The position numbers were made by a program, and so were the translations under genes. A stretch of DNA of 57,270 nucleotides from Macrostomum lignano (Eukaryota): positions 61,685 to 118,954 of the forward strand of contig NIVC01003108.1 in NCBI GenBank assembly GCA_002269645.1, given 5' to 3'. The stretch's first letter is position 1, and every line of letters begins with the position of its first letter. Under the pieces are notes generated by a model. It was not told where the DNA came from, ran no database searches, and was given only the letters and a program-made list of their open reading frames with translations. Shown piece by piece: positions 16,010 through 57,270 of this stretch.

Positions 16010-16995
16010 GATTTGAGGATTTGAGGAGATTTGAGGAGAGAAGACGGGAGAAAGAAGAGGGGAGAAAGAAGAGGAGAGAGAGAAGAGGGGAGAGAGGAGA
16101 GGAAAAAGAAGAGAGAGGGGAGAGAGGAGAGGGGGAGAGAATAGGAGAGAGGGGAGAGAGGAGAGAGAGGAGAGAGGAGAGGAAAGAGAGGAGAGGGGAG
16201 AGAGGAGAGGGGGAGAGAATAGGAGAGAGGGGAGAGAGGAGAGAGAGGAGAGGGGAGAGAGGAGAGAGGGGAGAGAGGAGAGGGGGAGAGAATAGGAGAG
16301 GGGAGAGAGGAGAGAGGAGAGGAAAGAGAGGAGAGGGGAGAGAGGAGAGGGGAAGAGAATAGGAGAGAGGGGAGAGAGGAGAGAGAGGAGAGAGGAGAGG
16401 AAAGAGAGGAGAGGGGAGAGAGTAGAGGGGGAGAGAATAGGAGAGAGGGGAGAGAGGAGAGGGGGAGAGAGGAGAGAGGAGAGAGAGGAGAGGGAAGAGA
16501 GGAGAGGGGGAGAGAATAGGAGAGGAGAGAGGGGGAGAGGGGAGAGAGGAGAGGGGACAGAGGAGAGAGGGGAGAGAGGAGAGGGGAGAAAGGAGAGGGG
16601 GAGAGAATAGGAGAGGGGAGAGAGGATAGGGGACAGAGGAGAGAGGGGAGAGAGGACAGAGGAAAGAGGAGAGGAAAGAGAGGAGAGGGGAGAGGGGAGA
16701 GAGGAGAGAGAGGAGAGGGAGAGAGGAGAGGAAAGAGAGGAGAGAGAGGAGAGGGGAGAGAATAGGAGAGGGAGAGAGGAGAGAGAGGAGAGGGGAGAGA
16801 GAGAGAGAGGGAGAGAGGAGAGGGGAGAGAGGAGAGGGGAGAGAGGAGAGGGGAGAGAGGAGAGGGAGAGAGGAGAGGAAAGAGAGGAGAGAGAGGAGAG
16901 GGGAGAGAGGAGAGGGGAGAGAGGAGAGGGGAGAGAGGAGAGGGGAGAGAGGAGAGGGGAGAAAGGAGAGAAGGGAGTGAAAGGGGGAGAGGGGA
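16010..16995 (+). repeat. Polypurine GA tract, copy B (~1 kb)
   Basis: Same flanks as the tract in copy A, but shorter. Confidence 0.95.
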
Positions 16996-21660: not shown

Positions 21661-22833
21661 GTGTACGAGTGTTAGTGTATACGCATCATTAAGTCTAAAT
21701 TGTAGGTAAATCCCTGATTATTTGGCTTGCATCATTTCTAATTATCTTTCGAATGAAACATACGAGCTAGCCTAAAATTAATTCAATATTCGGTTTCACA
21801 AAATAATTTAGAAGCTCGAACAGCAGCCGTCTTCTTTCATTAATCATATAATGCCACTGTAAATATGAATGGCAATATTCGCCAGCTAATAATATTAGTA
21901 GTTGATTACTGCCTTGTGCATTCCATGCCTGTTGTAAAAAAGTTTATTTAATATAAAAATTATCTAAGGAATTTATGACAGGCGGACAGCCGTAGCGAAT
22001 GCGGTCGAGGTTTTTTAAAGTGCGATTTGGGATGAGTGGGGGGGGGACAACAAAAATGACAACAAATAAATGAATTAAATATTCGATGCGAGAAAAGATC
22101 AAATAAACAGCTTTGTGACCAATTAATTAATAATTAATCATTTACTGACGCTGAAAAAGTCATGGCTGTGACACTTGGGGAGTAAACAACACAATCACCA
22201 GAGTAAGTAGTATAGATAGATTATCAACTGAGTAGTAGTCTGTAGCGAATCTGATTTGGTAATTCGTGAGAATAATGCGACGAAAATTGATCGAACCATA
22301 TGGCTAGCAAATCAGGCAGAAAAGACAGAAAAGCAAAAAGCAGAACAGCAGCTAGCGACTAAGATTTGGTTAGACAGGAGAAAAAAGCAGAAATGTTCCT
22401 GAAACACGGCAAAATGGAATTTTTTTAAATTAAGGTTATTGTTTGCAAAATTAATTTTTGCGTCGAAATTTAGGATTAAACATTTGTTAACATACTACTG
22501 TGAAAAATCACACGAATCTTTTTAATGAATAAGCAGTAATACGGCAAATAAAACAGAATCGTAAATTGGTAAAAAACTGGCGGCTTCATAAAAAATTCGT
22601 TTAACTGAGAAAATAATTAATAGAGAGCTAACTAGAGGGGAAATTTCTATCGTTAAAAATGTTCTTGTCGCGATATACTTTCCATACTACTCAGGCCAAG
22701 CAATAGTAGTCACCTTTGCTTATGCCTGCCTTAATATATTTTTCTCTCGGAGAAAACGGGCTGTAAAATTATTTTTTTCAACTCCCAGAAAAATGTCCTG
22801 TTTCTTAGAAAACAAATCGATCAGTCAGCGGCT

Positions 22834-35173: not shown

Positions 35174-36779
35174 TAGATCAAGTAGGCGGAACCGACTTTC
35201 TTATCATAAGCTTTATGCACCCAGTTTTGACCATAGATATCTGTTTGAAAACCCCAAGCGCAAAGCCCCGGAATCAAGTCATCCTTGCCACGAAATGGCA
35301 CCAATTCAAATTCGCGTATATATTGAAACCTTCCTTCGTTTCCTTGTGCGAAAATGGCAAACACTGTGGCCCGATGGGGCGTTTTCCTTGTGCTCCCGGG
35401 AGGCAAAGCTACGACACGAGACAAAGGGAGTGAGCATCGGTGGAATGCATCTTGATTTCCTGAGCAGCAGTCCAGATGCTAGCTAGAGAAGTCCATGATT
35501 TCTTCATACATACGCACAAGTAGCCAAGTCCTTCCCTGCTCCATACTGTCAACATCATTAATAATTCCGTTTAAGGTTTCTGCAAAATAAAAGCACTGCA
35601 GGTGATCCGTGCATGCAGAATTCATAGCAAAATTTACACTGCAGTCTCATGATGTAGCTCGTAGCAAAGAAGAGAGAGTATGGCTGTTTTCCTTGTGAAA
35701 TCATTGATTTATCCCAACGAATGTATGAATAGAAATTTATTTTTTCAAAGAGAGTTTCAGCCTTGGTGGCAAAATTCACTTGGTTAGTAAAACAACGTCT
35801 AAGAGGTTCGCGGGTGAACATCTGATATTTTAATTTCAAGAATCTTACCATAGAGACCTGAGTGGAATGGAGACGCTTTCATAAGATGTCCTGTGTTTGC
35901 ACGTCGTGTTTGCTTAAAAAGCAGAACCGATTTCTTTGCCACGAACCAGCCAGCAGAAAGTTCAACTAAGGGAGACATTAGAAGCAGTGTTCTACCGGTA
36001 TGGCGTGCTCCCATAGCAACCTGCATGCGCTCAGCCTCCAAAAGGCAGGAAGTCCTGTTCGACAACGTCAAAATTAAAGAAGCAGCTTGCATTGGCTAAA
36101 CTCACTCGTGTAACCACGCCATAGAGAAAGACCGTCAAAGACTCTACTTAAAGGGGGCCATGGTTTGCTTGTTTTCCTTTAGGATGCTCATTTTGGCAAT
36201 GACAGGGTCGTGGACAGCTGTACGCTCTCAGCAACGAAGTTTTTCGTCCTTAGCAACCAACTAATTTTCAAATAAGCTTTATTCCTCATCGCATATTGCG
36301 GCTTCCTACATTAGACTTCTTTCCTTCTCTGCCAGACTCTTTCTCCATAATGTATTCTCTCGCTATTTTGTCCCACATTGCTTCGGGATGTTAGACTAGC
36401 TGCGACGATGTTGTTTGATGTGAAATTGATAGAAAAAAGGTACCTACGAGGAACAGTTTTCATGGAATTACTTTTAAAGTGGTTTAAGCAATAGGCATAT
36501 ACTACTGTTGAAGTGGTTACTTGCATCGCCATTCCGCGAAAAAGAGTTGCGGCAAGAAAACTCTCTGGCTTTCTGGCTTCGCAGAAATTCACAATATGAA
36601 GAACTACCAATAAGTGCAGTTCTGTAAAGCCGAGAGATTTCATGGGACTTCGGTTGCAGTCAGGCTGGCGAGGAAGCTAAGAAACCGTTTCTAACTCGGC
36701 CTTCCTGCTCAAGAAAGAGAATTTTTCCAGCTGTTCGTTAGACAAACACACTTGGCAACATCGGCTGCCGCTGCCAGTC

Positions 36780-36900: not shown

Positions 36901-37479
36901 CGAGTTCAACAGGGTGCATGATTGTGAAGCAATTGTATGAGGGTCTGTCTGATAGTACATGCTATTGTTATTTTGATGTGCTGATGTGGTGCTTTGGCGA
37001 AGATTATCTAGGTATTCTTTATTAGTTTTTGGCAAAGCATTAGGGATAGGGTTGGACTTTAGGTACATGCATGCAGGACACGGAAATTTGGGTAGGACTT
37101 CAAAACTAGCCCTGTTCTTTGTTGGTGTTTTGTCAACCAAAATTTGGTTACTCTTCAACAACTTATACTACTTAAAGTTAGTAGCCTTTAGTCGCTTCGA
37201 ATCCGCTTCGCAAATTGACTAGGTGAGCGCATGATTGGATTACGGGAAGCTTTGTTCAAGCAGTTCTCTACCTGGTAAAGCAGCACTTGCGCTTTCTGCC
37301 ACTTCATTGGAGGCGAATCCATTTAACTCATTTCCTGACCACCCGAACAGAACAGAGAGAAGAACATTTTCTAGCCTATAGCAGCTCCAAGGCTGTTGTC
37401 GGATTTTTCTATTAAAGCTTGGAGTTCTGTTCATCACAGGTTGAGTCACAGGATTGCAAGCACAGAGCTGAACTCAGTC

Positions 37480-40400
37480 ATGAACTGCACTCTGCTGCTG
37501 GGCCTCGCCGTCTGCTGCCTGGCACTGAATAGTCTTGTCCAAGCAATCTCTGCTGATGAGGCTCTTCTAAAAGCAATGGGTCTCAAGTCCATCTACAATC
37601 GAGAGGTTCGCCCGGAGCCAGACCTGGACAATGCCAACCTCATTGACGTGTCATTCAACCTGAACAGGCTGGTTAAAGTGGTACGCTCGGAATCGAACTT
37701 CTGAAACTCTTGCCTGAATAAGGATCTTAGCTCGTACATAAACCAGATTTTTAGATTTTTAATAAAGATTTTCTTAGTTTTTTAGCACTCAAAATCCAAT
37801 ATTCTCCTTCTTTTCTGGATTTTTGCTGGAGTTTGTGCTCCTACTTGGGATCCAAAGGTCAATGACAAACAAGTCATTCATATTCATCGCAAATTCTTTT
37901 CATGCTTTTCAGGATTCCGCTGCTCAAGAAATTATGCTCCAGATGTGGTTCAACTTGGTGAGTCTTCATCCAATAGACTTAGTTGGGTAGGCTCTACAAT
38001 TCCCTCATGAAGATTTGATCGAGCGCAAAGATCTTCGCCCCAAACCCCGGCAGGAGTGGACGGACCCTCGGCTGGCCTGGTTGGGAAAATTCAACTCAAC
38101 TTTCGACAATGTGAGCTCGATATTCGTGCCGGCAGACCTGATCTGGCAGTCCGATGTCGGCTTCTTCGATCTGTGAGACCCTTCTGCATCATTCTTTAGA
38201 GAAACTTTACGAGAACCTGCTGACTTCATCATTTTTAAACAAATTTCCAAGGCCCACGGGCAGTGCATTCAGAAGGATGTACTTGGAACACTTTTAAATT
38301 ATAAAATTATCATCACCTGAAGTCGCTTGATTTAACATTTTCCAATTTTTGGATATGAAACTTTTTCAATGCATTTTGAAATGCTACTACTCATTTTACG
38401 AGTTGTCCTTGTCCGAAATTTAAAGCTTCATTCGCATTCTAGATTGGATTTCAAGCGAACATCAAGTGAGCGAGTAGTTCTTGTTCTGAAAAACAATGGC
38501 ATGGTGCAGTACTCAATCGAGGTTCTCACTCTGTCCAAGTGTGAGATGGACATGGCCGGGTTTCCCTACGACACGCAGACCTGCACTCAGCAGGTGGGCT
38601 CGGCAGTCCAGACAACGGAGACAATCAGGCTCAAGTTGGAAATTCAGAGCGAGAGGGATACTATAACTACCTATTTGGCTAAGAATACCGACTTCTGCAT
38701 TCTGAATGTGACAGCGAAACAGACGGTCGATGTTGAGTACGACAAGATCGACTTTACTATAAAGATCAAGGTGAGTTCAACTATGAAAAAGAAAGCTAAC
38801 TATCTGTTCAGTGCCCAACTGGCTGAGAATATTGGCAAGGGAATAAAAGTATTATCTAAGCCACGAATCAAAGGGCAGAACTGCAACGCGTTTGACTCTC
38901 TCGCGAAAAGTACCTGTCTGGATTCGGTTCCGTGAGCGGTCACACAAATTTTGTGTTGCTATCCGTATGCGTTCTCAAGGTTTTGTGTCCTGGCTGGCTG
39001 TGGGTCAACCGTCATATCGCCTTGATACGGCAGAAATGTTCAAAAAGCCCCGCTAACGAAGTAACGAATGCACCTCAATTAGTCAAAAGCCAAAAAGAGT
39101 CCAATGACAGTAAAAGCACGAAATCTGGCAGCAAGGTGATCGAATTTCAAGAAAATTTCCTTAAAACTCCTGAAATTTAAAAGTCACTGATGGTAACGCT
39201 ACAGAAAATGCTTACTGTGTATTTCAGCGTCGAACCACTTTCTACGTGATGAACCTCATCTTGCCCAGCATCCTCCTGCTCGCCATCTCAACTCTGGCCT
39301 TCTGCCTGCCGCCAGACTGCGGCGAGCGAATCTCGTTCAGCGTCACCATCGTGCTGTCCATGTGCGTGTTCCTGCAGCTCACTAGCAACTACATACCTGC
39401 TCAAAGCAATTCCGTGCCTCTACTCAGTGAGTGCAGCTTCAGCACTTTTTCATTTAGCATCTCTGCTCACTGTCACCCGGATGTAATTTTGCATCAGAAT
39501 AAAATTTTACCCTGAGCCAAGAGTCCTTTTTGGCAGTGATGTTTAAGCGCCGAAGGCAGGTGTTTTTTGGGGACTTGACCAGCTGAGCACCCCCAGACTA
39601 TTTACTCCCCTCACTCGAGCCCATCGCCGCGAGCACTTAATTAACCTGAGGCCTGTTTTGCCAGAGAATAAATACTTCGTGCACAGGCACAGCTACCTTC
39701 TGCTTCTCTACCTTCTGAGTGGCTAACTCCCCCTTGACCTCTGCTGTATGGCTAACTAACAGCTAATGGCAGCTAAGCAATAATCTCAAAGGTAGTGTCC
39801 CAAACTCAATGCCAGGAAACATTTCCGAACACCGAATTTCCTTTTCCGCCAGCCTACTACTGCAGCCTAGCAGTCGGCATGACGATGGTCAATGTTATAG
39901 CGAATGCGTTCGTGTTGAACTGCCACTACCGCCGGCTGACGCAGCCCCGGGTTTCCAACTGGCTGATCCGCCTGCTGTTCCTCAACCGGTTCGTAGCCCG
40001 TCGCAGGCGGCTGTTTGGCATCGATTCGGTGAGCGGTGACGCACTCAGGCCCAGCAATAGCTAAGCATTGCTGTTGGAATAGCACGGATGTGAAAAGTTC
40101 ATGAGGAATAGCTCAAATGCTACCCGATCCCTGGGGCATTGTCTGATTTATTTTTAAGCTAGCTATCTGATATGTGCAAAATCTCCTTATAGCGCACTGC
40201 ATGCGTTTGCTCCAGGCCTATGAAAATGTCAAAAGTGAAATTGTATTTTGCGTAGGAACTTTAGTTCCAAGAGGGTGCCCGCATGTGCACTGGCTAGCAG
40301 TATATATAGTAGATTTGATGTTGTTAGAAATCTACTCTTTGATGGAACAATGCGCACGATGTCTCACGTGTGTGCTTTTATAGTTACCTGAACTTTTGGG

Positions 40401-44225: not shown

Positions 44226-45898
44226 ATGCTGTGGGCTGCACTATCAAGCTTCATCGCTCTCTTGCTCTGCCGTGCCGCAGCGGCAGCGGCTGCCTCGGCT
44301 TCTCCAGATGAGGCCTTGGAATTGGCGCTGAAACTGAAATCCGCCTACAACAAGGACGCCAGGCCGCCACCTGACAACGGTTCGGCAAACTTGGTGACCG
44401 TCTTTTTCAACCTGAATAATTTGGTTCGAGTGGTGAGCCTCCAATTTTAATGTGTTTGTGAGCCAATATCATTGCTCTGAGCATGTGGTCGAGCTTGGAT
44501 CTTTCCAACCCGCAGGACTCGGCAGCGCAGGAGATCATGCTGCAGGTCTGGTTCAGCCTGGTGAGACTTCTTGTTATTCGATGCGCAGCAATCTCGTAAT
44601 AAAGTCGAAAAATGTCTTATTAAGATTTGGGGGCCGTAGCCTAGTGGGTCTAGCGCGGTGCTCTTATGTGCCAGCGGCCCAGGCTCGATCCCTGTGCGTA
44701 TGAATGCGAACGTATCCGCGCGCTTGTGTGCCAAGGATCACTGTAGTGTACAGGACGAAAAATTCAAAGATTGCGTAATTTTAGGGGGTGCTACAGTGGT
44801 CCTTGTTGTGTGCCTGCTCAGAGGAGTCGGCGGAATGGGCAGTAATGCCTCTCGCCGGTTGTGCGACAATGTTCACCTGAAGTGCGCCAGGGTGCACACA
44901 GCCCCGAGTCCCTGCCTCTAACTAAAAAACTAAACTTATAAATATTTCATCTACGTCGGATGATACGCGACCATTTCATAGGTTAAGTGTATTAGAGCTC
45001 ACAGCAGTAAAATTTACCAACACACAAATATCTCAAGCAACTAGCATTTTTAAAGAAACAACGAGGCTTTGGATGGACGCCTATCTGCAACTGTCAAGTA
45101 TTTACGCTTTTTTCCTTCCCAGTTTTCCACAATATCCGAATCTGCATGATAAGAGTTAAAAAGTAACAAATACAAGAGTTGAGACTCTCATAGATAGCAA
45201 CAACCTTCTAACTACGAGACGATACTTGGGTAAGTGCATTAGCGCTTCCAGCGTATGTAAAAACTATCGATTTTTTCGAATAAATATCTCATGAAAGACA
45301 ATTCAATGGGTTTGCATGGCATCACGGAAGCTTGTTTACGTACTCGTACGTGCCAACACTATTCCCTGCAGTACTGGTTTGACAGCCGCTTGGTCTGGAA
45401 AGGAAAATTCAACTCCAGCTTTGACAACGTGAGCTCCATTTTCGTGCCAGCCGACCTGCTCTGGCAACCCGACGTGGCCTTTTATGACCTGTAAGTTCGT
45501 CCGTACGAACGATTGATGGCACTGATAAATGTAGAGAAGTCACTTGTAGATCACAGACACTATAGTACCTGGATAGGCCACTCAGTACATTTGAGTATAA
45601 ACTTTGAGTTGAGTATGAGATAATTAGAAGCACTTAAATGTAGTTTAGGTCAAGACTCACCCCTAGCCCCTCTCAATCTTCCGACCGCGTCTTTACACGC
45701 TTATTTACGTTTTCATTTTTTTGTCATTTTACGATATCTTTTATTTTCTATGCTTCCTAAATATAAGATATATAATATATAGTATAATTGATTACACCTG
45801 CCACAATAGGCAGATGTGCAACTGACTGCTCAGCTATTTTCAGTCATTGCTATCTGAAGGCGCGTACGGCTATTCAGTCCAAGGAAATGGGAGGGTCG

Positions 45899-45963
<65 letters not shown>

Positions 45964-48521
45964 TAATCAGAAAGGACTTTCTTAAGCTCATTAGCATCGT
46001 AATGAACAATGCATTCTAGTCTGGACCTGCGTCGAACATCCAGCGAAAAGATCGTGTTGGTTGTCAAAAGCGACGGCCTGGTGCAGTACACATCGGAGCT
46101 GCTCACCCATTCCAAGTGCGAAATGAATATGGCTGAGTTTCCTTACGACACGCAGAGCTGTCACCAGCGGGTGTCCTCGGTGGTGCACACGAACGAGACA
46201 ATCGCGTTGCGCATTAGGGAATCGAAACCCGGGGACTCGCTGACGGACTTTCTGGTCAAAAATATCGACTTCTGCATTGTGAACGTCAGTACTGTTAAGT
46301 CCATTGACGTGATCTACGATTTTGTGGAGCTCCGTGTTGATATCAAGGTTCGGACCCAGTTAGAGGTTACATTGGCCCATGAATGCTTGTTTGATGCGGT
46401 CCGTTGGTGATAGATGTCTTTAATGGTGGATGTCTTTGTGATGGATGTCTTTGTGATGGATGTCTCTGTGATGGATGTCTTTGTGATGGATGTCTCTGTG
46501 ATGGATGTCCTTGTGATGGATGTCTTTGATGCATGGATGTCTTTGTGATGGATGTCTTTGATGCATGGATGCCTTTGTGATGGATGTCTTTGTGATGGAT
46601 GTCTTTGTGATGGATGTCTTTGTGATGGATGTCTCTGTGATGGATGTCTTTGTGATGGATGTCTTTGATGCATGGATGCCTTTGTGATGGATGTCTTTGA
46701 TGCATGGATGCCTTTGTGATGGATTTCTTTGATGCATGGATGCCTTTGTGATGGATGTCTTTGTGATGGATGTCTCTGTGATGGATGTCTTTGTGATGGA
46801 TGTCTTTGATGCATGGATGCCTTTGTGATGGATGTCTTTGATGCATGGATGCCTTTGTGATGGATGTCTCTGTGATGGATGTCCTTGTGATGGATGTCTT
46901 TGATGCATGGATGCCTTTGTGATGGATGTCTTTGATGCATGGATGTCTTTGTGATGGATGTCTCTGTGATGGATGTCTCTGTGATGGATGTCTTTGTGAT
47001 GGATGTCTTTGATGCATGGATGCCTTTGTGATGGATGTCTTTGATGCATGGATGTCTTTGTGATGGATGTCTCTGTGATGGATGTCTTTGTGATGGATTT
47101 CTTTGATGCATAACAAGAGGCTGATGGAGTGATCATGCATGCAGATATTTAGATAGCATAGCACTGTACTAGAGCATCTGTGGGCTAGCGAAAAGATGTC
47201 ACATAATGTAGGACTTACTGAGAATTCCAGAATTTTCCATATCTAGCTCAAGGTTCAAATTTTAATGAGAATAATTTTGCATTCATTCTTAACTCCCGAA
47301 AATTATTGACAGCGGAAAACTACGTTTTACATGATGAACCTAATTCTGCCCAGCTTCCTACTGCTCGCCATCTCAACTCTGGCCTTCTGTCTCCCACCGG
47401 AATGTGGAGAGAGATTGTCCCTGAGCATCACCATCGTGCTGTCCATGTGCGTGTTTCTGCAGCTGACTGGAAACTTCACGCCAACACAGGGAGACTCGGT
47501 GCCTCTTCTAAGTGAGTTCTTCGTTTTGCCGCAGTAGAAATGTGTCAAGTGTCATGGGGCTCATGGAGGGCTCATAGGGCAGTTGCTAAGATTTCAAAGG
47601 CTCATAGGGAACTGCAGGAATTCTTGGGCTCATGGAGAATCGATGAAATGCCACGGTTCATGGGGGGAATTGCTGAAATTCTGTGGCTCATGTGTTCAGA
47701 TGCTTTGAGCCAAAGCCCATAGGGGATCTGATCTTTTAGGCTAGATATTCAGGGCGGATGCTTTTTTGGTTCAAACATCATTTTCCTTAAAAGATTGACA
47801 ATAGTGACTGTACAAGGTTAAAAGCCACACGTAGTTTATTCAAAAAAAGATTCTTTCCTTTGTTGCCTCCCCAACGGGGGGGGCAGACGAAATTGCTAGT
47901 TGCAGTCTAAATCTTCTTAAAGAACAGCAGCAGAAAGTGTGTTGCTATTAGAAGAAATTGCTTGCAACATTGCAGCCTGGTACTTCAGCCTCGCGGTGCT
48001 TCTGACCATGGCTAACCTGGTTGCCAATGCCTTCGTTCTGAGCTGCCACTTTGAGCAGTTTTCTGAGAACGCTCGAGTCCCCGGCCGTCTCACTCGGCTG
48101 CTGTTTCTCAATAGGCTCTTCTGCGGCCATCCGTCTCGTACAGAATCTCCGTCGGCACGAAATTCCAATGTGGTGATCGAGCCAACTGCTGCTGAAGTGC
48201 GTGACCAACAATCATTCACTGTGGATTGTTGATTAGCTTTTGCACAGGTGCATGCATTCACATATTTCATTCCAACTCTAGAACACGTACTCCGACGGAA
48301 CGGAACTTCGCGTCATCTCCCAACGAAGGTTAGGAAAAGCCGAATCTGAAACAACGATGCAACACCCAAGTTTCAAAAGTGACTGGAGCGCCGTTGTGAC
48401 CGCCGCTGACCGCTGCTTTTTTGCCTTCTTTTTCTCGTTGACAATGTCGCTAGCGCTGGCGATTGCGATTCTGGATGCCATGAACTCCAAGACCAGCTGC
48501 ATCGTGGGCAAGAATAATTAA
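44226..48521 (+). CDS. Divergent nicotinic-type Cys-loop receptor subunit 2; exons 44226-44432, 44516-44560, 45372-45490, 46020-46347, 47313-47511, 47976-48196, 48282-48521; 452 aa
   Basis: Same exon sizes (45/119/328/199) as subunit 1; CEMNMAEFPYDTQSC, LPPECGERLSLSITIVLS, DWSAVVTAADRCFF. Confidence 0.92.
44631..44925 (+). mobile_element. tRNA-derived SINE copy in receptor 2 intron 2
   Basis: A-box TAGCCTAGTGG, B-box-like GGCTCGATCCC, body shared with 41523-41890, A-rich end. Confidence 0.75.
45900..45960 (+). repeat. (CA)n microsatellite
   Basis: Direct observation. Confidence 0.99.
46425..47110 (+). repeat. 15-bp based minisatellite (TGTGATGGATGTCTT, with TGATGCATGGATG variants) in receptor 2 intron 4
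   Basis: Tandem units. Confidence 0.95.
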
Positions 48522-49328: not shown

Positions 49329-50228
49329 ATGTCATACCAGACTCCCCAAGACTTCATCGTTGCCATTCTGTACTTTGTATCCTTCACTGCCGCTGCGACC
49401 TCGCCTGACGAAGCTCTGTCATTGGCACTGGGCTTGAAGACCAGCTACAACAAGGACGCGCGTCCTCCGCCCGATGCTGGCTCAGCGAATCGAATCGGCG
49501 TTTTCTTTAACCTGAACAACCTCGCCAGGGTGGTCAGATTGATCGCTTTTAATCGTCCTTCATCGGAATAATTGGTTATAGTTACCTGTAGTTACAGCCA
49601 AAAATCAAGGCACACCCCATGGGGTACATCAGCCCCGATTTACTCATTGGCAAGCATGCATATAGCACACTCTGCGCGTTGGATGCTGTCCCTTATGGTC
49701 GTGAATCGCACGACAGGCTCCTGCAGGCCAATTTTTCTGTACGGACCGCAAATAATTAAGCCGCTGTCTGTAAGACACAACAAAATTGTATCCAAGACCA
49801 TTGATGACCGATTTCACTGCCCACAGAACTCAGCGACAGGGGAGATGACTCTGCAAGTCTGGTTTAATTTGGTATGACTAATTTGCAATGAATAAGTTTC
49901 TGTTAAACTTTCCCACCCCGAGGTTGCAGCAGATGTACACATAAAGTGGCCAAGGTAAACTCAACAATTCTGGGTAATTAGAGAAAATTTGAATAAAATG
50001 CTCCTCTAGTTTGGCGTTCCGTCGGACCTCCAGCGACAAAATTGTTCTAGTTGTCGAAAACAACGGCTGGGTGTCGCACACTGCGGAGTTTCTGACCCAG
50101 TCCAAGTGCGCAATGAATATGGCCAGGTTTCCCTACGACACGCAGAGCTGTCGCCAGCTCGTGTCCTCAGTGGTGCACACGAGTGACACCGCTAAGCTGT
50201 TCATTCGTCCAACAAAATCAGCGGACTC
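49329..50228 (+). pseudogene. Cys-loop receptor subunit 3, disrupted: exons 49329-49532, 49827-49871, exon 3 absent, exon 4 from 50010 truncated at 50228 by the Polinton
   Basis: YNKDARPPPD, TLQVWFNL, CAMNMARFPYDTQSC; homology to the paralog stops at GCG GAC TC. Confidence 0.88.
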
Positions 50229-50238
50229 AGTAGTATAT

Positions 50239-50477
50239 ACGATACAAAATAGCCAGCAAACCGTTCTCACCATTGCAAACAATTTAACCCTTTATCAGTG
50301 TGAAATGACTTGTTTTCCCTTCATTTTCGCTCGTCTTCACTTCGCTCAACTCGCTTCGCTCATCCTCGCTTCATTTCGGTCAAACAAGTCATTTCACACT
50401 TACAACGATTAATTCTCTTTGAATGGTGAGAACACGCTCTCGTCGAACGCTTTGGTTTGCTGGCTATTTTGTATCGT
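50239..50477. other. Nested fold-back at the element terminus
   Basis: Perfect inverted arms 50239-50262/50454-50477 (24 bp), 50263-50274/50422-50433 (12 bp) and 50297-50315/50382-50400 (19 bp). Confidence 0.93.
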
Positions 50478-50610
50478 CAACGCTTCCAACTCTCCCCAAT
50501 ACACACAAACTCTCTATAACCCGTCGCACGCGCCGCAGGCGCGAAGGGTCTGGAAGTTTTGGTAGAGAAAGAATAGAAGCTATTTATAGTCAGCTCACCC
50601 ACCCACTCAA

Positions 50611-50675
50611 CATTCCATTTAGACCAGATTTTTCGTTTTGGTTTTCGTTTTCAAAAATCTGGTCTAAATGGAATG
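50611..50675. other. 23-bp perfect inverted repeat with 19-nt loop
   Basis: CATTCCATTTAGACCAGATTTTT / AAAAATCTGGTCTAAATGGAATG. Confidence 0.95.
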
Positions 50676-50714
50676 CAGACAATCTTTTTTCTGTTACTAA
50701 AAATAGAACAAAAA

Positions 50715-51113
50715 ATGACACACGTTACTAATATGCAAAATCTGAATGAATTGCAGGTAGGAGATCCAGTTGAATACCGAGGTGAGGGTCTTTTTGATGT
50801 GGTTGGAACAGCAGCAAATTTTGTTAAAGACAATATGGGTCTTTTAGGGCAAGCAGGCTCCGCAGCAGGTTCTATAACAAATGCTGTAAAAGGAGGAATT
50901 GAAGCAGCTAGAGCAGCAGAAGAACTAAAGAAATTGAGAGAATTTAACGACACCCTCTCACAAATAAATGCAATAAAAGATTTAAAGCTGGCACAAGCCG
51001 CACAACCAACAGAAACCCCTACGAAAAGCACTCCAATAAGTAATAAAGATATTCAGGATTTTAATAAAATGCTAACCACCATTAAAGGCGGAAAAGGATT
51101 AAAAAAATTTTAA
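50715..51113 (+). CDS. Polinton small ORF with Gly/Ala-rich amphipathic segment (putative virion core or membrane-active protein)
   Basis: AAAAATG start context; RGEGLFDVVGTAANFVKDNMGLLGQAGSAAGSITNAVKGG; function inferred only. Confidence 0.65.
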   Translation: MTHVTNMQNLNELQVGDPVEYRGEGLFDVVGTAANFVKDNMGLLGQAGSAAGSITNAVKGGIEAARAAEELKKLREFNDTLSQINAIKDLKLAQAAQPTETPTKSTPISNKDIQDFNKMLTTIKGGKGLKKF

Positions 51114-51123
51114 CAATATAAAA

Positions 51124-52098
51124 ATGGACACGGATAATGAACGGCTACATTTTATAGGAGAAATTGTAGATACTTTAAATCTAGATGATAATAAACATAG
51201 CCACACAATGTTAAAAAGATTGGATCGTTTAGGTAAAAAACTTGACTACGACATCGATACATTTAAACTTGCTGCAAAATATGCACAAGAAGGAAGGCCA
51301 ATATCCTTTAAGAATCGTGGTAGAAATTATAGGCTGACAGAGTCCGATGTAAAATTTTTATTGGAGACTCACACTAAAAAGGACGGTGGTTTACTACCTA
51401 TTTTACCAATTCTTTTAGGCCTCGGAGCAGCCGGAGCAGCCGGTTTAGCAGGCAAAAGAATTCATGATAACCGAAAACAGTTAGCAGAATTAAAGGCAAA
51501 ACAGGGAGGCATATTACCACTTGCAACTTTGTTACCAATAATTTTTGCAGGAATAGGAGCAGCTGGAGGAGTTGCTGGTGGAGCAGCTGGAATTGCAAAA
51601 GCAGTAAATGACAAAAAAGCTGCGGATGAAAAAGCTAAAAGAGAGGCCGAATTTCAAAGACAGCAAATAACGCAGGATGCTCAATTCAAACAGAAACTTA
51701 TTGACACCATTAATAGTAGTTCAGCAACAGCAGAGCAAAAAAGAAATGCAGAAGCTAGGTTAGCAGCCGGAAAAGGTTTACTGTTAAATGGCAGCGGCTT
51801 GGTACTAAAAGGAACAACCCAAGGAAGTGGAGTTGTAGCAGATAAACTACAGGAATTTGGTCAAACTTTAGAAAAAACGGGTGAGAAAGCTAAAGGGTTT
51901 TTTGATAATATTGGAGCTAATTTTAGGCCGGCAGTTCAGAAGATTTTTACTAAGTTAGGAAAAGATTTTAACATAATTGAAAAACACGACGGAAGCGGAT
52001 TATATCTCGAAATGAGACCAAAAGCAGGTTCAGGAATTTTCTTAAATTCAAACGTTATGGGCAATGGACTACTGTTACCAAAAGCAGATCTCGAATAG
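51124..52098 (+). CDS. Adenovirus pX/mu-like core protein precursor, 324 aa
   Basis: Two GG-[LI]LP hydrophobic blocks (DGGLLPILPILLGLGAAG; QGGILPLATLLPIIFAGIGAAGGVAGGAAGIAKAV) resembling the adenoviral pX C-terminus GGILPLLIPLIAAAIGA. Confidence 0.65.
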   Translation: MDTDNERLHFIGEIVDTLNLDDNKHSHTMLKRLDRLGKKLDYDIDTFKLAAKYAQEGRPISFKNRGRNYRLTESDVKFLLETHTKKDGGLLPILPILLGLGAAGAAGLAGKRIHDNRKQLAELKAKQGGILPLATLLPIIFAGIGAAGGVAGGAAGIAKAVNDKKAADEKAKREAEFQRQQITQDAQFKQKLIDTINSSSATAEQKRNAEARLAAGKGLLLNGSGLVLKGTTQGSGVVADKLQEFGQTLEKTGEKAKGFFDNIGANFRPAVQKIFTKLGKDFNIIEKHDGSGLYLEMRPKAGSGIFLNSNVMGNGLLLPKADLE

Positions 52099-52182
52099 GC
52101 TCCTGGGAGGTGGGTCAGGACGCTAAAAACATAAAATTAAAAAACCAATAATTCAAACATTATATAAATTATATTCTATAAA

Positions 52183-55100
52183 ATGGAACAAAGATTGACC
52201 CCAGATCAGATTCGACAACTTCTTGCAAATGAGCGCCAACAGTTCAATCTATTACAAAGACAGATTGAACAAATTGAACGGCGCCAAAGACAGCAACTTC
52301 GGCGAAGAGCAAGAGAAAGACAGAGAGAAAGGCAGAGAGAAAGAGAAATACAAGAACAACAAATAAACGAATTAGCAAATAGTATAAGGGCAGAAGAAGC
52401 TTTTAAGCGTTTAGTAGAAAAGGTTGAATATGAAAAAAGAATAGCAGAATTAGAAAAAAACCAAAAGAAACAAACACGTCGGAAAACTAAGAATAAATCG
52501 GATGAAAAACCATTAGAAGAGTTTATTAGGGTTTATCGATTTGAACCAATGCAGAAGGTGCTAGATTTTATTGAAACCCAACTTTCAAACGGATATAGTG
52601 TTGAAATTACTAATGCTAGTGTACAATATTTTTATAACGATAGCGGCGATGATCGCGAAGAGATTAATCAATACTTAGCAACATTTTATAATATAAAACA
52701 GTTTCAAGCTTGGATTAAGCATTTGGTAGAAAACTATAACATGAATTTAAGTATGTTTTCTGGAAGACTTAAAATGACACCAAATGAAATTACAATTAAA
52801 CACGAAAGGTCAAAGCAGGGTATGGGAACAAATGTCATGTGTGAAATTGCAGAGTATAAAGATGAGTACTGTTACATACCTAGTGATGGAAATTGTTTCT
52901 ATAAGTGCGTTAAATTTATATATGGTGATAAAGCCCCACGCAAAGACGAATATGGTGCTTGGTTGTACGACTCAAGAACCCAAAGAGGTTTAATGACAAA
53001 TTCAAGAATTGGAAGATTCAATGAATATTTTAATCTTAATATAGGGCTGTACAACACCAAAAATCGCGGCATTGAACCAAAGTCTCAAAGAGGGATTCAC
53101 CACGATTGGTTATTAATAAATTATTTCCACACACCCGATTACCACATTGGGCATTATTGTCTTATATCAAATAAACAACGAGGAATCGCCCTCGAACGGA
53201 TAAAAGACAATTATAAAGTAGTGTTTAAAAACCCAACACCCGAAAATGTTAAGGAGTTAAAAATATTCAACACACCCACAAATCCCAATAAATCAAATGT
53301 ATATATATTTGATTTTGAAACATATTTAAATTATAATCAACAAGCATGCCCGTATGCGGTTGGTCTTTTAAATTATAATGACTTTTCTAATAATTGTAAC
53401 GAAACCCCAGAGGAAATAAAGAAACTAACTAAGATCTTGATATCAGATCGCGGTTGTGATTTTCAAACAGACGGAGCTAAACCGACTGCGTTAGAAAAAT
53501 GTTTAAATACCTTGGTACAGTTAGGTCAAAAAAGATTGTTTTGATCGCACACAACTCATCCCGCTTTGATTCATACATACCACTATTTTGTAATATAAAA
53601 CCAATTAAAATTCTCAAAACCCCAAGAGGAATATTATCAATCACTTTTGTAAACGATTACGCGTCAAAAGAGGTTAGTGCGTTTATAAATAAAGATAAGA
53701 AGAAGAATCACAAGGATTCGAAACAAACCATTACGATGCTTTGTTCATATCAACACGCTTCAATGAGTTTAAAAAAGTTTTGCTCATCAATGACAATTAG
53801 AGAGGATTTGCGAAAAACCTCAATGGTTCATGACATTACCGAGCACGATTATCTAGAACGCATAGACGAATGGTATGAATATTTACAATTTGATCTTATT
53901 TCTTTATGTGCCTGTATTCATAAATATAACGAAATAGCATATGAAATTGGAGGAATGACAATGTTTGATACCTTACGTGTTCAAGTTTAACATTAAAATG
54001 TTGGTTTAAAGATTTTGTTAGAGTTGAAGACAAAATGAAACAATATCTAAAGACAGAAGAAAAAACTAATTACATTAAAAAAGTTGAAGAAATAATATCT
54101 CCGTTGAAAATAGAAGATTATTTTGACTTAAGCAATCTTGAAAAAGCGAAATACCAAACACTATTAAGAAAAGAATTTTCAGTTCACTCTCATACCAATC
54201 CTTATATAAGAAGGTTTATGCGGGACGCAGTCAAAGGAGGTAGAGTATTTGCACTAATAAATAAATACGAAAGTGATTGTTTTCAAACAATAGTAGACGT
54301 TGTAAAAGACCATTTAAAAACACCAACAAGCGACCCATGCGAGGTTATATCATCTTATCTCAAAAGCGATATGGAAGAAAAAAAGAAAAGCAATTAAACT
54401 AAAAATCAATATCAATTGGGTACCGTATCAGATTGTTTAATGAATTTTGATGGGGTCTCATTGTACCCATCCGCCATGTCTGATAAGGATAGCGAATATC
54501 CAAGAGCAGAAACAGCCAGGGTGTTTGATATAAGCGAGGAAAAAGATTTCTTATCACAATTTAATTCACAAACCTTTCGACCAAAAACAGCGGTTTTAAA
54601 GATTATGTATGAGAATCCTAACACCGTTTTTCTTCAACATCTCCCATCGAAAGATAAAGAGAAATTTTATAATCCGGAAACAAAAGCAAACGAAACAAAA
54701 ACATTAAATAGGTTTAAAACGGAAAGGTAATTGACACCTTATGTTCCGTAGATATACAAGAAATTGTAAGAATGGGTGGAAAAATATTAAAGATATATAG
54801 TGGAATTGTATATGAAAAAAATTACGATTTCTCTCCGTTTCAGAATTATATTACAAGCCTTTTTGAAAGGAGAAAAGTATTTAAAAAAGAAAATAACGAG
54901 GCAGGTTCTGAATTGGTAAAAACACTATTAAATTCATTATATGGCAAAACAGTTCAAAGAGACATTACTTTCACAACACATCTCTGGAATTTGCAAACAT
55001 TAAAAACAGAATACTATGACACAATCAAATCATATGAGAAAATATGTGACGATTTATATTATGTTGAAAAAAATAAAGACACGCAAGAATATGTAGATGA

Positions 55101-55779
55101 GGAAGAGGATTGTCCTATAACAAGCCTTTGTCCAGCACAATTAGGAATATTTATCTTAGCTCATTCAAGAAGGATCATGAATAATTTTATCACCTCTATA
55201 GACGGCTCAAAGACTCCAGAAATTTATTACGGCGATACAGATTCGTTATATATACATAAAAAATTGGGACACATTAAATAAAAACGGGCATGTTGGAAAT
55301 AATTTAAGTCAAGGAAAAAATGATTATGGAGAGGGTGGAATTATATTCGGTTATTTTATCGCTCCTAAAATTAAATATTGTCTTTTATTGAAAGACGATT
55401 TTATTATGGAAGAGAAAAAAACATTTAAAGGATGTGCAAATGATAAGATTAATTTTGCATCGTTTAAAACGTTATATGATGGGCAGTCAATAAAAGTAAA
55501 TAATAATGCCCCATGGAAACGATCGTTTGAAGGAGGCATAATAATCCCCAAAGTGGATCAACAATATCAAAAACATATACCTCTACGATAAACACATTTA
55601 AAAGAGAAAAACCGGATAAAAACGGAGTTATGAAACCATTCTTTAAAAACTATTTTGATGACAAACCACAACACGAAAATTCAATTGCATATTATAACAG
55701 TTTACTATTTGATGTTGATTATAATTGTTTTGAGTTTGATATTGATGAATTAGCACTTGAAAAAAACCAAAGCATGTAA
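52183..55779 (+). CDS. polB: Protein-primed family B DNA polymerase with N-terminal extension and OTU-like protease; split by ~6 single-base frameshifts
   Basis: ExoI YIFDFETY, ExoII IAHNSSRFDSY, ExoIII YLQFD, AVKGGRV, motif A FDGVSLYPSAM, motif B KTLLNSLYGKTVQ, motif C YYGDTDSLYI, FIAPKIKY. Confidence 0.95.
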
Positions 55780-56094
55780 TTGTTTGACCATATCATTAAC
55801 TTCAATTTCATATATTATTGAAGGCCAATTGTCCTCGCAGTCGGCAGGGTAACTTAAACATTCCTTTATTTTTTTCCTAAGTTTTTTTATTCGTCTAACC
55901 AATCTATCTATTTCAATTTCAATTACTGTTTCAGCATAATCAATTGCTTTTTGTATAAAACGCTTTCTTTTATCCAAGTCGTATCGGATAGGAAACATAT
56001 CGTCCCCATAATCACTATAAAACATAGTATTTATTTTTTTATTAATATAATTAAGTTCACGCTCTTTAGTGATAAGGATAATTTGTATCTCCAT
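55750..56094 (-). CDS. Polinton hypothetical protein (likely start at 56094)
   Basis: ORF with TATAAGAAAATG start context; overlaps the polB end convergently. Confidence 0.55.
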   Translation of the reverse strand: MEIQIILITKERELNYINKKINTMFYSDYGDDMFPIRYDLDKRKRFIQKAIDYAETVIEIEIDRLVRRIKKLRKKIKECLSYPADCEDNWPSIIYEIEVNDMVKQLHALVFFKC

Positions 56095-56183
56095 TTTCTT
56101 ATAAAAAAATTTAGTCATCTTCGTCAGTCTCCCAAACGGAAGCTAATTTTACAGTCCTGTCACTCTTTTTATTTTTGTTTGTT

Positions 56184-56441
56184 TTATTTTAAATTGCAAC
56201 CCACCCTCGTGCTGTATTTTATAATGAACGCTTTAGGTTTATTAATAACTAAAACTGGAAAATTTTTAACATCATTCCCACTTAGACATAGAACTGTATG
56301 TGAATCCAATTGTAAAAATATCGATTGAAGTCCAATAAATTTAACCTGTCTCAAACATATAATATTATATTCTTTATTCTCCAACATATTGGGGGTGACA
56401 TAATTAATCACATTAGAATCGGTTTTCAACCAACTTTCCAT
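56184..56441 (-). CDS. Polinton hypothetical protein (likely start at 56441)
   Basis: ORF with TTAAAAATG start context. Confidence 0.45.
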   Translation of the reverse strand: MESWLKTDSNVINYVTPNMLENKEYNIICLRQVKFIGLQSIFLQLDSHTVLCLSGNDVKNFPVLVINKPKAFIIKYSTRVGCNLK

Positions 56442-56466
56442 TTTTAATCTAAAAAAATAACAAAAA

Positions 56467-56928
56467 ATGAAAGACATTTACGAATGTAAAAAATGTAACG
56501 TGACTATGCATAGAGCTCAAACAGCAAGCGGAGATATATATCATATGTGCTATTCATGTTCTAAAATATATCAATTTGAAAAAACAAAAAAGATTGAAAA
56601 TTCATATTACTATTTTAAAAACACAATATTAAGAAATCTTACAAGAGACATTTCTCATCCAATTTTAATTCCCGGAAATAATGTTTATTTATATAACAAC
56701 TTTTTCAATTTAAATAAAGGAAAGGGATTAAGTTCGAAAGACTCCGAAAGGATTTTAATTTTAGTTGGATATTATTTTAATTTTCTTATTCGAGAGAATA
56801 CAAAGTTTATAAGGATAGGTAACATACCTAACGAAATGTTACTGAAAAGTCATTGGAATTTTTATGTATTGATAAAAAATTTAAACCTAGAATTACAAGA
56901 GAATTACCACTTTGGGAAGAATATATAA
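56467..56928 (+). CDS. Polinton hypothetical protein with N-terminal CxxC..CxxC zinc-ribbon-like motif
   Basis: YECKKC...CYSCSK; AAAAAATG start. Confidence 0.6.
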   Translation: MKDIYECKKCNVTMHRAQTASGDIYHMCYSCSKIYQFEKTKKIENSYYYFKNTILRNLTRDISHPILIPGNNVYLYNNFFNLNKGKGLSSKDSERILILVGYYFNFLIRENTKFIRIGNIPNEMLLKSHWNFYVLIKNLNLELQENYHFGKNI

Positions 56929-56962
56929 CGTATGCGTTAGAAAAATTAAACAACTTGAAGTT

Positions 56963-57166
56963 CTACAGCAGCGCTACCTGATCGGGGGCTTTGTACCCCA
57001 TAGCCATAGTTTCTGGTTTGTATTCAATAGTTTCTATCGGCGGAGCTTTGGGTTTATCGAGTCTCAACTCTTTTAACTCCATATCGGTAAAAGTTTCAAC
57101 ATCTAAAATTCTATTTCGATCTTTTAAATATTTTTTCATATAATTCAACCGCCGTTGATAACTCAT
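56963..57166 (-). CDS. Polinton small hypothetical protein
   Basis: 67-aa ORF, charged and Pro-rich. Confidence 0.4.
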   Translation of the reverse strand: MSYQRRLNYMKKYLKDRNRILDVETFTDMELKELRLDKPKAPPIETIEYKPETMAMGYKAPDQVALL

Positions 57167-57270
57167 GAATTGTTATCTCTCCATCATCCAATATTTTTGC
57201 ACATATAAATACAACTGATTTTTATATTGTTTGCAATATCTCTTAATGATTTATATTTATCCTTTCGTTT

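What the first reader, a model, noticed from the sequence alone, without database searches (positions are those of the whole stretch)
50200..50260. Polinton/adintovirus-like element integrated mid-exon in a Cys-loop receptor gene, with a predictable target-site duplication
Seen: receptor 3 exon 4 tracks its paralog up to GCG GAC TC (paralog GGG GAC TCG CTG), then switches to AGTAGTATAT and AT-rich viral-type ORFs. Known: Polintons begin 5'-AG (often AGTAGT) and make 6-bp TSDs. Inferred: the left end is 50229 and the TSD is GGACTC (50223-50228). This would be an exactly mapped endogenous virus insertion that disrupts a receptor paralog.
Basis: partly seen in the sequence, partly recalled or inferred. 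Interest (0 to 1): 0.8.

Follow-up and report, generated by a model that had tools for sequence, protein, structure and literature searches.

The report
Endogenous Maverick-type virus splitting receptor exon
A decayed copy of a Maverick/Polinton-type (adintovirus-like) DNA virus sits inside an exon of a duplicated flatworm neurotransmitter-receptor gene; its left end can be mapped to the base, but this is a well-known kind of insertion, so the finding is correct and fairly ordinary.

Summary
The Cys-loop exon of the third of three tandem receptor paralogs follows its two paralogs up to base 50228. An AT-rich element then starts at 50229 and runs past the window end.

The element encodes a protein-primed family B DNA polymerase (PF03175). 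Its closest relatives are a family of at least 10 copies in the flatworm Macrostomum lignano (about 92% DNA identity, colinear). Six independent copies of this family, each with an unrelated flank, start at the same base with the same 9-mer. That 9-mer is the (AGT)2 end motif published for Mavericks. So 50229 is a true element terminus, not a truncation or an assembly join.

Sibling copies carry an A32-type packaging ATPase and a double-jelly-roll capsid gene further downstream.

Three things could not be tested because no sequence reached the right end: the right inverted repeat, the predicted GGACTC duplication, and an integrase. No integrase lies in the first ~15 kb of the sibling copies.

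Two caveats. The window copy is dead, with seven frameshifts in the polymerase. The receptor copy also lacks a 119-nt exon, so it is defective even without the insertion.

Verdict: a new member of a known kind, of modest interest. The self-complementary module next to the end, which differs between lineages, is the only unusual feature.

The parts
49329..50228 (+). Receptor paralog 3 (rec3), 5' part. It comprises exon 1 (49329-49532), exon 2 (49827-49871) and a truncated exon 4 (50010-50228) that holds the Cys-loop (C-x13-C). Exon 3 of the paralogs is absent.
   Evidence: The exon 4 peptide hits Neur_chan_LBD at E 1.2e-9, profile positions 100-160 of 216.
44226..48520 (+). Receptor paralog 2 (rec2), the intact comparator. 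Exons 1-5 are 44226-44432, 44516-44560, 45372-45490, 46020-46347 and 47313-47511. Exons 6-7 lie at about 47975-48520.
   Evidence: Joining the exons at canonical GT-AG sites gives an open frame with Neur_chan_LBD (E 1.2e-34) and Neur_chan_memb (E 2.2e-10).
50223..50228 (.). Host bases next to the element. These are the predicted 6-bp target-site duplication (GGACTC). Untested.
   Evidence: Position follows. TSD length of 6 bp (5-8 bp) comes from PMC8097293 and PMC10748475. No right end is available.
50229..50238 (+). Left terminus of the element, with an (AGT)2-type end motif.
   Evidence: All six independent copies start here. The motif is published for Mavericks.
50239..50477 (.). Self-complementary module (foldback) next to the end. 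The outer arms are 24 nt and perfectly complementary, and further arms are nested inside them.
   Evidence: MFE -94.6 kcal/mol for 50229-50700, z = -12.3; three stem pairs are changed on both sides between the window copy and the M. lignano copies.
50478..50672 (.). Rest of the non-coding left arm. It holds short CTTCCAAC/CTCCCCAA-type repeats, a GC-rich palindromic core (around 50527-50545), and a second hairpin (50611-50675).
   Evidence: This stretch is conserved in all sibling copies from 50512 onward.
50673..51113 (+). ORF A (146 aa), open. Small Gly/Ala-rich protein, presumably a virion or core protein.
   Evidence: Compared with L006 it shows 12 synonymous and 5 nonsynonymous codon differences. 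There is a weak tblastn match in the Lottia locus.
51124..52098 (+). ORF B (324 aa), open. It has two hydrophobic Gly/Ala-rich segments and is probably a virion core or membrane-active protein.
   Evidence: Weak Adeno_PX hit (E 4.9e-4, below the cut-off). A homologous segment lies next to the DJR capsid gene in relative L001. Compared with L006 it shows 57 synonymous and 22 nonsynonymous differences.
52183..55770 (+). Protein-primed family B DNA polymerase, a pseudogene. It carries seven frameshifting indels relative to the intact 1206-aa M. lignano gene and no nonsense substitutions. The N-terminal part has a conserved Cys/His (OTU-like) region.
55750..57270 (.). Small ORFs of unknown function on both strands: 55750-56118(-), 56184-56477(-), 56467-56928(+, Cys-rich N-terminus) and 56963-57166(-). 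The element continues past the window end.
   Evidence: No Pfam family was found. The region is colinear with L006 13600-15129.

Best explanation
The window ends in the left ~7 kb of an endogenous Maverick/Polinton-type (adintovirus-like) virus. The host is a Macrostomum flatworm (M. lignano or a close relative).

Shown:
- The element's genuine left terminus, an (AGT)2-type end, is joined at base 50229 to the middle of the ligand-binding-domain exon of rec3. Rec3 is the third of three tandem Cys-loop receptor paralogs.
- This copy is a fossil. Its polymerase carries seven frameshifts, while two small upstream genes are still open.
- Rec3 also lacks an internal 119-nt exon.

Inferred:
- A linear double-stranded genome, replicated by its own protein-primed polymerase, was inserted end-first by an integrase-type reaction. 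The reiterated AGT at the very end fits the sliding/jumping-back step known for protein-primed replication.
- Such a reaction would have duplicated about 6 host bases, predicted here as GGACTC.
- The rest of exon 4 and exons 5-7 should resume after the right end, more than 8 kb beyond the window.
For: Junction: the exon follows its paralogs to 50228 and then stops.

Element identity:
- PF03175 pPolB is present.
- The closest relatives are M. lignano proteins (PAA48597.1 and nine others, two of them intact at 1206 aa).
- Window 50229-57270 aligns colinearly with L006 8021-15129 (92.0% over 7159 columns) and with L007 (91.8%).

Terminus:
- The window, L005, L006, L007/L010, L008 and L009 all start with the same 9-mer and have unrelated upstream flanks.
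- (AGT)2//(ACT)2 ends and perfect 6-bp TSDs are documented for Mavericks (PMC8097293).

Viral gene set in sibling copies, downstream of the part seen in the window:
- Pox_A32 ATPase (29-30 bits, cut-off 22.8).
- DJR-like capsid gene (E 8.6e-5).
- A fibre-like ORF with an F5/8 type C (discoidin) domain.
- More distant relatives (L001, L003, L004) also pair this polymerase with a DJR capsid gene.

Decay of the window copy:
- Seven frameshifting indels in the polymerase, none in a homopolymer run, and no nonsense changes.
- 51 of 1189 residues differ.
- This argues for a real, old integration rather than a contaminating free virus.
Against: - The right end, the inverted repeat, the TSD and the resumed exon are all outside the window. 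No sibling locus reached a right end either; the farthest reach was 15.6 kb from the left end.
- No rve integrase was found in the window or in the first ~15 kb of the sibling copies, which tested ORFs tile almost fully.
- The protease is recognisable only by eye.
- In one sibling (L005) the first 283 nt are replaced by an unrelated foldback. The module next to the end is therefore not a fixed part of the family.
- The window's own genome is not in the searchable collections, so continuity across the junction could not be checked with reads.
Confidence: 0.85

Rival explanations
1. The first 283 bases (50229-50511) are a separate MITE-like foldback element, and the virus proper starts at about 50512. 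On this reading the exon was hit by the foldback, or the foldback and virus travel together only in one lineage.
For: In L005, similarity to the window starts only at 50512. An unrelated 269-nt foldback takes the place of the window's module, carries the end motif at both of its ends, and abuts the conserved part directly. The end 9-mer also occurs at four other places in the window without any other similarity to the element.
Against: Five of the six independent junctions (window, L006, L007/L010, L008, L009) carry end, foldback and conserved part as one contiguous unit with different flanks. The mobile unit therefore includes the foldback. The window's foldback lacks the end motif at its inner side, so it is not a complete two-ended element.
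Confidence: 0.12
2. The element is an integrase-less, adenovirus-like linear virus that entered the chromosome by end-joining at its genome terminus. It would then not be a Polinton/Maverick in the strict sense, and no regular TSD would be expected.
For: No integrase was found in the window or in the first ~15 kb of the sibling copies. Integrase-less relatives of adintoviruses are reported in animals (PMC8502044).
Against: At least several kb of each sibling copy remain unread. Six insertions all end at exactly the same terminal base, the family has many copies in one genome, and the (AGT)2 motif matches the one associated with 6-bp TSDs in Mavericks. All of this fits integrase-mediated insertion better than random end-joining.
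Confidence: 0.1
3. The junction is an assembly artefact that joins a host contig to a free or contaminating viral genome.
For: The composition changes sharply at the junction. No reads were available to check it.
Against: The viral copy is pseudogenised, with seven frameshifts in the polymerase that are not of homopolymer type. The family is demonstrably integrated at several other loci in M. lignano contigs, with host flanks. The break falls exactly at the element's first base and inside a recognisable exon.
Confidence: 0.03

Closest known systems
The multi-copy element family of Macrostomum lignano (assembly GCA_002269645.1; polymerase proteins PAA58900.1, PAA57278.1, PAA48597.1 and others, annotated only as hypothetical proteins or DNA-directed DNA polymerase)
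   Same: It is colinear with the window from the first base (50229) to the window end, at 92% DNA identity. It has the same end 9-mer, the same foldback (in five of six copies), the same ORF A and ORF B, and the same polymerase and small ORFs.
   Different: The window copy differs by about 6% in substitutions and has its polymerase broken by seven frameshifts. Two M. lignano copies keep an intact 1206-aa gene, while ORF A and ORF B are open in the window but frameshifted in L006. The window may come from another strain, subfamily or sister species; I could not decide which.
Vertebrate Mavericks / Polintons (Kapitonov and Jurka 2006; Barreat and Katzourakis 2021, PMC8097293)
   Same: Both have pPolB and an (AGT)2 end motif, and both are integrated in the host genome. 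Sibling copies add an A32/FtsK-type ATPase and a DJR capsid gene. The size is more than 15.6 kb, within the 13-25 kb range.
   Different: Integrase, long TIRs and the 6-bp TSD were not seen here because they were out of reach. The gene order differs from the two-module vertebrate layout, as far as it could be read. The foldback module next to the end is not described there, to my knowledge.
Alpha adintoviruses (Starrett et al. 2021, PMC8502044)
   Same: Both are animal-associated, and both have a PolB of the PF03175 class with an extra N-terminal Cys/His domain. UniRef labels one M. lignano fragment 'OTU domain-containing'. Both have adenovirus-like small core proteins, though the Adeno_PX hit here is weak.
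   Different: My own tests did not confirm the OTU fold (no Pfam hit, no PDB sequence hit, no significant Foldseek hit). Adenain and integrase were not demonstrated.
Adenovirus and phi29-type protein-primed linear genomes
   Same: Both use a family B polymerase of the protein-primed class. Both have a short reiterated sequence at the very end of the genome, which in those systems allows sliding or jumping back after initiation. That mechanism is established knowledge and was not tested here.
   Different: Those viruses do not integrate as part of their cycle and have no foldback module next to the terminus.

Membership tests
Polinton/Maverick (Adintoviridae-like) elements | Protein-primed family B DNA polymerase (PF03175) | tested here: met
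   An open stretch of the window gene hits PF03175 at E 1.9e-12 and 47.3 bits, above the 25.8 cut-off. The intact sibling P0184 hits at E 1.9e-18. Homologues carry PF03175.
Polinton/Maverick (Adintoviridae-like) elements | Retrovirus-like (rve) integrase | tested here: inconclusive
   No hit was found in any ORF of the window part or in the ORFs that tile the first ~15 kb of the sibling copies. The remainder of every copy lies outside the loci that could be fetched.
Polinton/Maverick (Adintoviridae-like) elements | Double-jelly-roll major capsid protein | tested here: inconclusive
   The gene is not in the window. In sibling L006 (20243-21714, minus strand, split once) there is a PF21738 hit at E 8.6e-5 and 22.3 bits, below the cut-off of 27. 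It has intact homologues of 486-501 aa at 42-49% identity. Precomputed PF21738 hits lie next to the polymerase in relatives L001, L003 and L004.
Polinton/Maverick (Adintoviridae-like) elements | A32/FtsK-type genome-packaging ATPase | tested here: met
   The gene is not in the window. In sibling copies that are colinear with the window, PF04665 scores 29.1 bits (L006 19393-20193, minus strand) and 30.0 bits (L008), above the 22.8 cut-off.
Polinton/Maverick (Adintoviridae-like) elements | Adenain-like cysteine protease | tested here: inconclusive
   The candidate ORFs (L006 17915-18163, L007 16793-17257) gave no Pfam hit. A protease-like Cys motif was seen by eye only.
Polinton/Maverick (Adintoviridae-like) elements | Characteristic end motif, 5'-(AGT)2 or (AG)3 | tested here: met
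   The window element starts with (AGT)2 at 50229. The same start occurs in six independent copies. The motif is as published (PMC8097293).
Polinton/Maverick (Adintoviridae-like) elements | Terminal inverted repeats of 100-1500 bp | not testable with these tools
   The right end lies beyond the window and beyond every sibling locus.
Polinton/Maverick (Adintoviridae-like) elements | Target-site duplication of 6 bp (5-8 bp) | not testable with these tools
   Only left junctions are available. Short segments in the window and in L005 that are bounded by the end motif show no matching flanks.
Alpha adintovirus PolB class | N-terminal OTU-like cysteine protease domain fused to PF03175 | tested here: inconclusive
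   There is an invariant Cys and a nearly invariant His across 19 homologues, and UniRef labels one fragment as OTU. Against this, there was no Pfam hit, no PDB hit with a profile, and no Foldseek match at E <= 0.001 for an AlphaFold model with mean pLDDT 72.
Cys-loop ligand-gated ion channels (host gene) | Neur_chan_LBD and Neur_chan_memb domains, plus the C-x13-C loop | tested here: met
   Rec2 exons 1-5 give PF02931 at E 1.2e-34 and PF02932 at E 2.2e-10. Rec3 exon 4 gives PF02931 at E 1.2e-9. The C-x13-C loop is present in the rec3 exon 4 translation.

The most novel reading that the evidence does not exclude
This flatworm Maverick family carries, directly behind its (AGT)n end, a ~240-270-nt self-complementary module. 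The module is completely different in sequence between lineages (window/L006-L010 versus L005), yet it is palindromic in both. Within one lineage it is kept palindromic by changes on both arms. This could be an exchangeable hairpin cassette with a role at the genome end, for example as an origin, a packaging signal or an integration signal. It could also be a small two-ended parasite that rides on the virus ends. I am not aware of such a terminal architecture being described for Polintons or adintoviruses.
Probability: 0.2. Interest if true: 0.5.

Novelty: new member of a known kind. Interest (0 to 1): 0.3.

Why it matters
The finding gives a base-exact left junction for an endogenous Maverick/adintovirus-type element in a flatworm. 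It also ties that element to a family in Macrostomum lignano, a model animal, that has many copies and was active recently: copies are 94-98% alike and two have an intact 1206-aa polymerase. In the literature I could search, nobody has described this family.

For genome annotation, two points follow:
- The AT-rich block should be masked as a virus-derived repeat.
- Receptor paralog 3 should be called a pseudogene. It has both an internal exon loss and the insertion.

For virus evolution, the modular foldback next to the end is a small but concrete lead. Otherwise this is the expected behaviour of a known class. Adintovirus-like integrants are reported from all eumetazoan phyla (PMC8502044).

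Tried and rejected
**Reaching the right end**
- Exact look-ups of window ORFs found nothing, and a word-based protein search returned no self-hit, so the window's own assembly is not in the collections.
Seven went to M. lignano polymerase copies (L005-L010). All are limited to 10 kb past the polymerase and none has an internal deletion that brings the right end into view.
- A search with the sibling capsid protein found only three short foreign contigs and no annotated M. lignano protein to anchor on.
- Exact look-up of ten sibling ORFs found none in the collection.

**Other searches that gave nothing**
- Searching IMG/VR for close relatives found none, and only two distant (~30% identical) polymerase hits with a profile. 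Their contig ends were uninformative.
- The rest of the window holds no other copy of the element.

**Target-site duplication**
- I looked for a TSD around short segments bounded by the end motif (window 12777-13067 and 12777-13259; the L005 foldback). No matching flanks were found.

**OTU assignment of the polymerase N-terminus**
- Pfam, a PDB profile search, and an AlphaFold model searched with Foldseek gave no significant match.

**Explanations rejected**
- Frameshifts as long-read homopolymer errors: none of the seven lies in a homopolymer run.
- Truncated copy, with 50229 as a random breakpoint: six copies share the same first base.

**Not used**
- I printed a stop-masked six-frame translation of the sibling right arm for a family scan but did not submit it, because the ORF-by-ORF scans already tile that region.

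**Species**
- I could not tell whether the window is M. lignano itself. Only one weak repeat match links the host flanks.

Full report
**1. The observation**

The window holds three tandem paralogs of a Cys-loop receptor gene on the + strand:
- rec1, about 37.5-41.3 kb
- rec2, 44.2-48.5 kb
- rec3, from 49.33 kb

Joining the predicted rec2 exons 1-5 at canonical GT-AG sites gives an open frame. It hits Neur_chan_LBD (E 1.2e-34) and Neur_chan_memb (E 2.2e-10).

The rec3 exon that carries the Cys-loop starts at 50010 and follows both paralogs up to ...GCGGACTC at 50228. Rec2 reads GGGGACTCGCTG at the same place and continues for another ~119 nt. From 50229 the similarity is gone, the sequence reads AGTAGTATAT..., and GC content drops from about 0.45-0.50 to about 0.28-0.37.

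**2. What is inserted**

The layout from 50229 to the window end is as follows.

| Window coordinates | Feature |
|---|---|
| 50229-50672 | Non-coding arm |
| 50673-51113 | ORF A, open |
| 51124-52098 | ORF B, open |
| 52183-55770 | One long gene broken into several open stretches |
| 55750-57270 | Several small ORFs on both strands |

The long gene is a protein-primed family B DNA polymerase (PF03175, E 1.9e-12, above the curated cut-off).

A word-based search with one stretch found about 100 fragmentary homologues in animal assemblies, including Lottia gigantea. An exhaustive HMMER search with the N-terminal stretch found one protein 91% identical, PAA48597.1 of the flatworm Macrostomum lignano. 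Its 90% cluster has ten M. lignano members, two of them intact at 1206 aa.

**3. The left end is real and exact**

I fetched six M. lignano loci around these polymerases (L005-L010).
- Window 50229-57270 aligns colinearly with L006 8021-15129 (92.0% over 7159 columns) and with L007 (91.8%).
- L008, L009 and L010 start their similarity to L006 at the same base.
- Printing the junctions side by side shows that every copy begins with the same 9-mer. Upstream sequences are unrelated, except that L007 and L010 are the same locus.

That makes six independent junctions, the window included, so 50229 is the element's own terminus. The motif is (AGT)2. [quoted passage not shown]

**4. Class of the element**

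Downstream of the part seen in the window, the sibling copies carry on the opposite strand:
- fibre-like ORFs, one with an F5/8 type C domain
- a protease-like ORF, recognised by eye only
- an A32-type packaging ATPase (PF04665, 29-30 bits, cut-off 22.8)
- a capsid gene with a sub-threshold DJR-like hit (E 8.6e-5), which has intact 486-501-aa homologues elsewhere

More distant relatives of the polymerase (L001, L003, L004) also sit next to DJR capsid genes.

ORF B has a weak adenovirus pX hit. A homologous segment lies next to the capsid gene in L001. Between the window and L006, synonymous differences dominate in ORF A (12 against 5) and ORF B (57 against 22), so both are real genes.

All of this fits the Polinton/Maverick, or Alpha-adintovirus-like, pattern (PMC8502044, PMC10748475). 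One thing is missing: no integrase appears in the window, nor in the ~15 kb of sibling sequence that tested ORFs tile. The element is longer than 15.6 kb, and I could not read its far end.

**5. State of this copy and of the host gene**

Against the intact L006 gene, the window polymerase has seven frameshifting indels and no nonsense substitution. Only 51 of 1189 residues differ, and none of the indels lies in a homopolymer run. The gene is therefore a true pseudogene that decayed after a period under selection. In L006 it is ORF A and ORF B that are frameshifted, so different copies decay in different genes.

The host copy is also damaged in a second way. The 119-nt exon 3 (W-x-D-x-R-L-x-W ... 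P-A-D-L-x-W-Q) is present in rec1 (38009-38173) and rec2 (45372-45490) but has no counterpart in rec3. Only a 138-nt intron separates rec3 exon 2 from exon 4, and joining them shifts the frame into stops. Rec3 is thus a pseudogene regardless of the insertion. The order of the two events is unknown.

**6. How it most likely got there**

- Shown: an end-exact junction of a linear-virus-type genome with host DNA, repeated at six loci.
- Inferred from the family: insertion by an element-encoded integrase that duplicates 5-8 (usually 6) host bases. The predicted duplication is GGACTC (50223-50228).
- Inferred from established knowledge of adenovirus and phi29 (not tested here): replication primed by a terminal protein. 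The reiterated AGT would allow the sliding/jumping-back step.
- Expected: the remainder of exon 4 and exons 5-7 should follow the right end.

**7. The unusual detail**

Behind the 10-nt end lies a 239-nt self-complementary module (50239-50477). Its outer arms are 24 nt and perfect. A second hairpin lies at 50611-50675. As single-stranded DNA, 50229-50700 folds at -94.6 kcal/mol (z = -12.3). Between the window and the M. lignano copies, three stem pairs changed on both sides.

In L005 the first 283 nt are replaced by an unrelated 269-nt foldback. It carries the end motif at both ends and abuts the conserved part directly. In L006 the 94 nt upstream of the end are an inverted copy, 79% identical, of sequence just inside the element. 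I cannot explain these facts with the data at hand. They feed the rival reading in which the foldback is a separate element.

The end 9-mer occurs five times in the window against 0.13 expected. This hints at other derivatives that use the same ends.

**8. Limits**

The window's own assembly is not in the searchable collections. No reads were available. The right end, the TSD, the TIR length and the integrase remain untested. The OTU assignment of the polymerase N-terminus was not confirmed.

**9. Verdict**

The finding is correct in its core and maps the left junction exactly. The element is a new member of a known kind, and an undescribed family as far as the searchable literature shows. Interest is modest at 0.3. 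The terminal foldback module is the only feature worth following up.

Noticed in passing
window 12777-12785(+), 22206-22214(+), 36498-36506(-), 37164-37172(-): The 9-mer that starts the element occurs four more times in the window, five in all against 0.13 expected. The sites at 12777 and 22206 lie in a duplicated segment. Each has one-mismatch inverted partners about 290 and 480 nt downstream. These may be short non-autonomous derivatives that use the same ends. They show no 6-bp flanking repeat and no other similarity to the element.
   Followed up: partly
window 49872-50009 (rec3) compared with 45372-45490 (rec2) and 38009-38173 (rec1): Rec3 lacks the 119-nt exon 3 of its paralogs. Exon 2 joined to exon 4 is out of frame, so rec3 is a pseudogene independently of the viral insertion.
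   Followed up: yes
L005 8014-8282 (M. lignano NIVC01002322.1): This sibling copy has a different 269-nt foldback in place of the window's first 283 nt. The foldback carries the end motif at both ends, the inner one with three ACT units, and its centre holds repeats like those at window 50478-50511.
   Followed up: partly
L006 7927-8020 (M. lignano NIVC01002506.1): Just upstream of the element end, directly after an assembly gap, lies an inverted copy (79% identical) of L006 8269-8340. It is either a remnant of another copy's right end or part of a larger palindrome. Upstream of the gap is a ~7-kb AT-rich satellite.
   Followed up: partly
L008 9539-11137(-); L006 about 23040-23621(+): Sibling copies encode a 532-aa fibre-like protein with an F5/8 type C (discoidin) domain (E 1.2e-11). 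At the edge of the readable part there is an interrupted frame with a phospholipase-A2-like H-D-x-x-Y motif, seen by eye only.
   Followed up: partly
L010 9141-16126(-) (M. lignano NIVC01003109.1): The public annotation places a spliced 185-aa gene model on the minus strand across the virion-gene part of a sibling copy, running over the locus edge. This suggests that transcripts map to the element.
   Followed up: no
window 1-29000 and 46407-47105: The first half of the window is dominated by satellites and minisatellites. These include a GA-rich array at 6881-9173 and 16036-16971, and 40-nt and 39-nt units. There is also a tandem segmental duplication with a period of about 9.4-10 kb. A 15-nt minisatellite fills rec2 intron 4.
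   Followed up: no
window 55750-56118(-): The 122-aa ORF that overlaps the polymerase 3' end shows 6 synonymous against 23 nonsynonymous differences from L006, together with frameshifting indels. The frame called here is probably not the real gene, or it is already decayed.
   Followed up: partly
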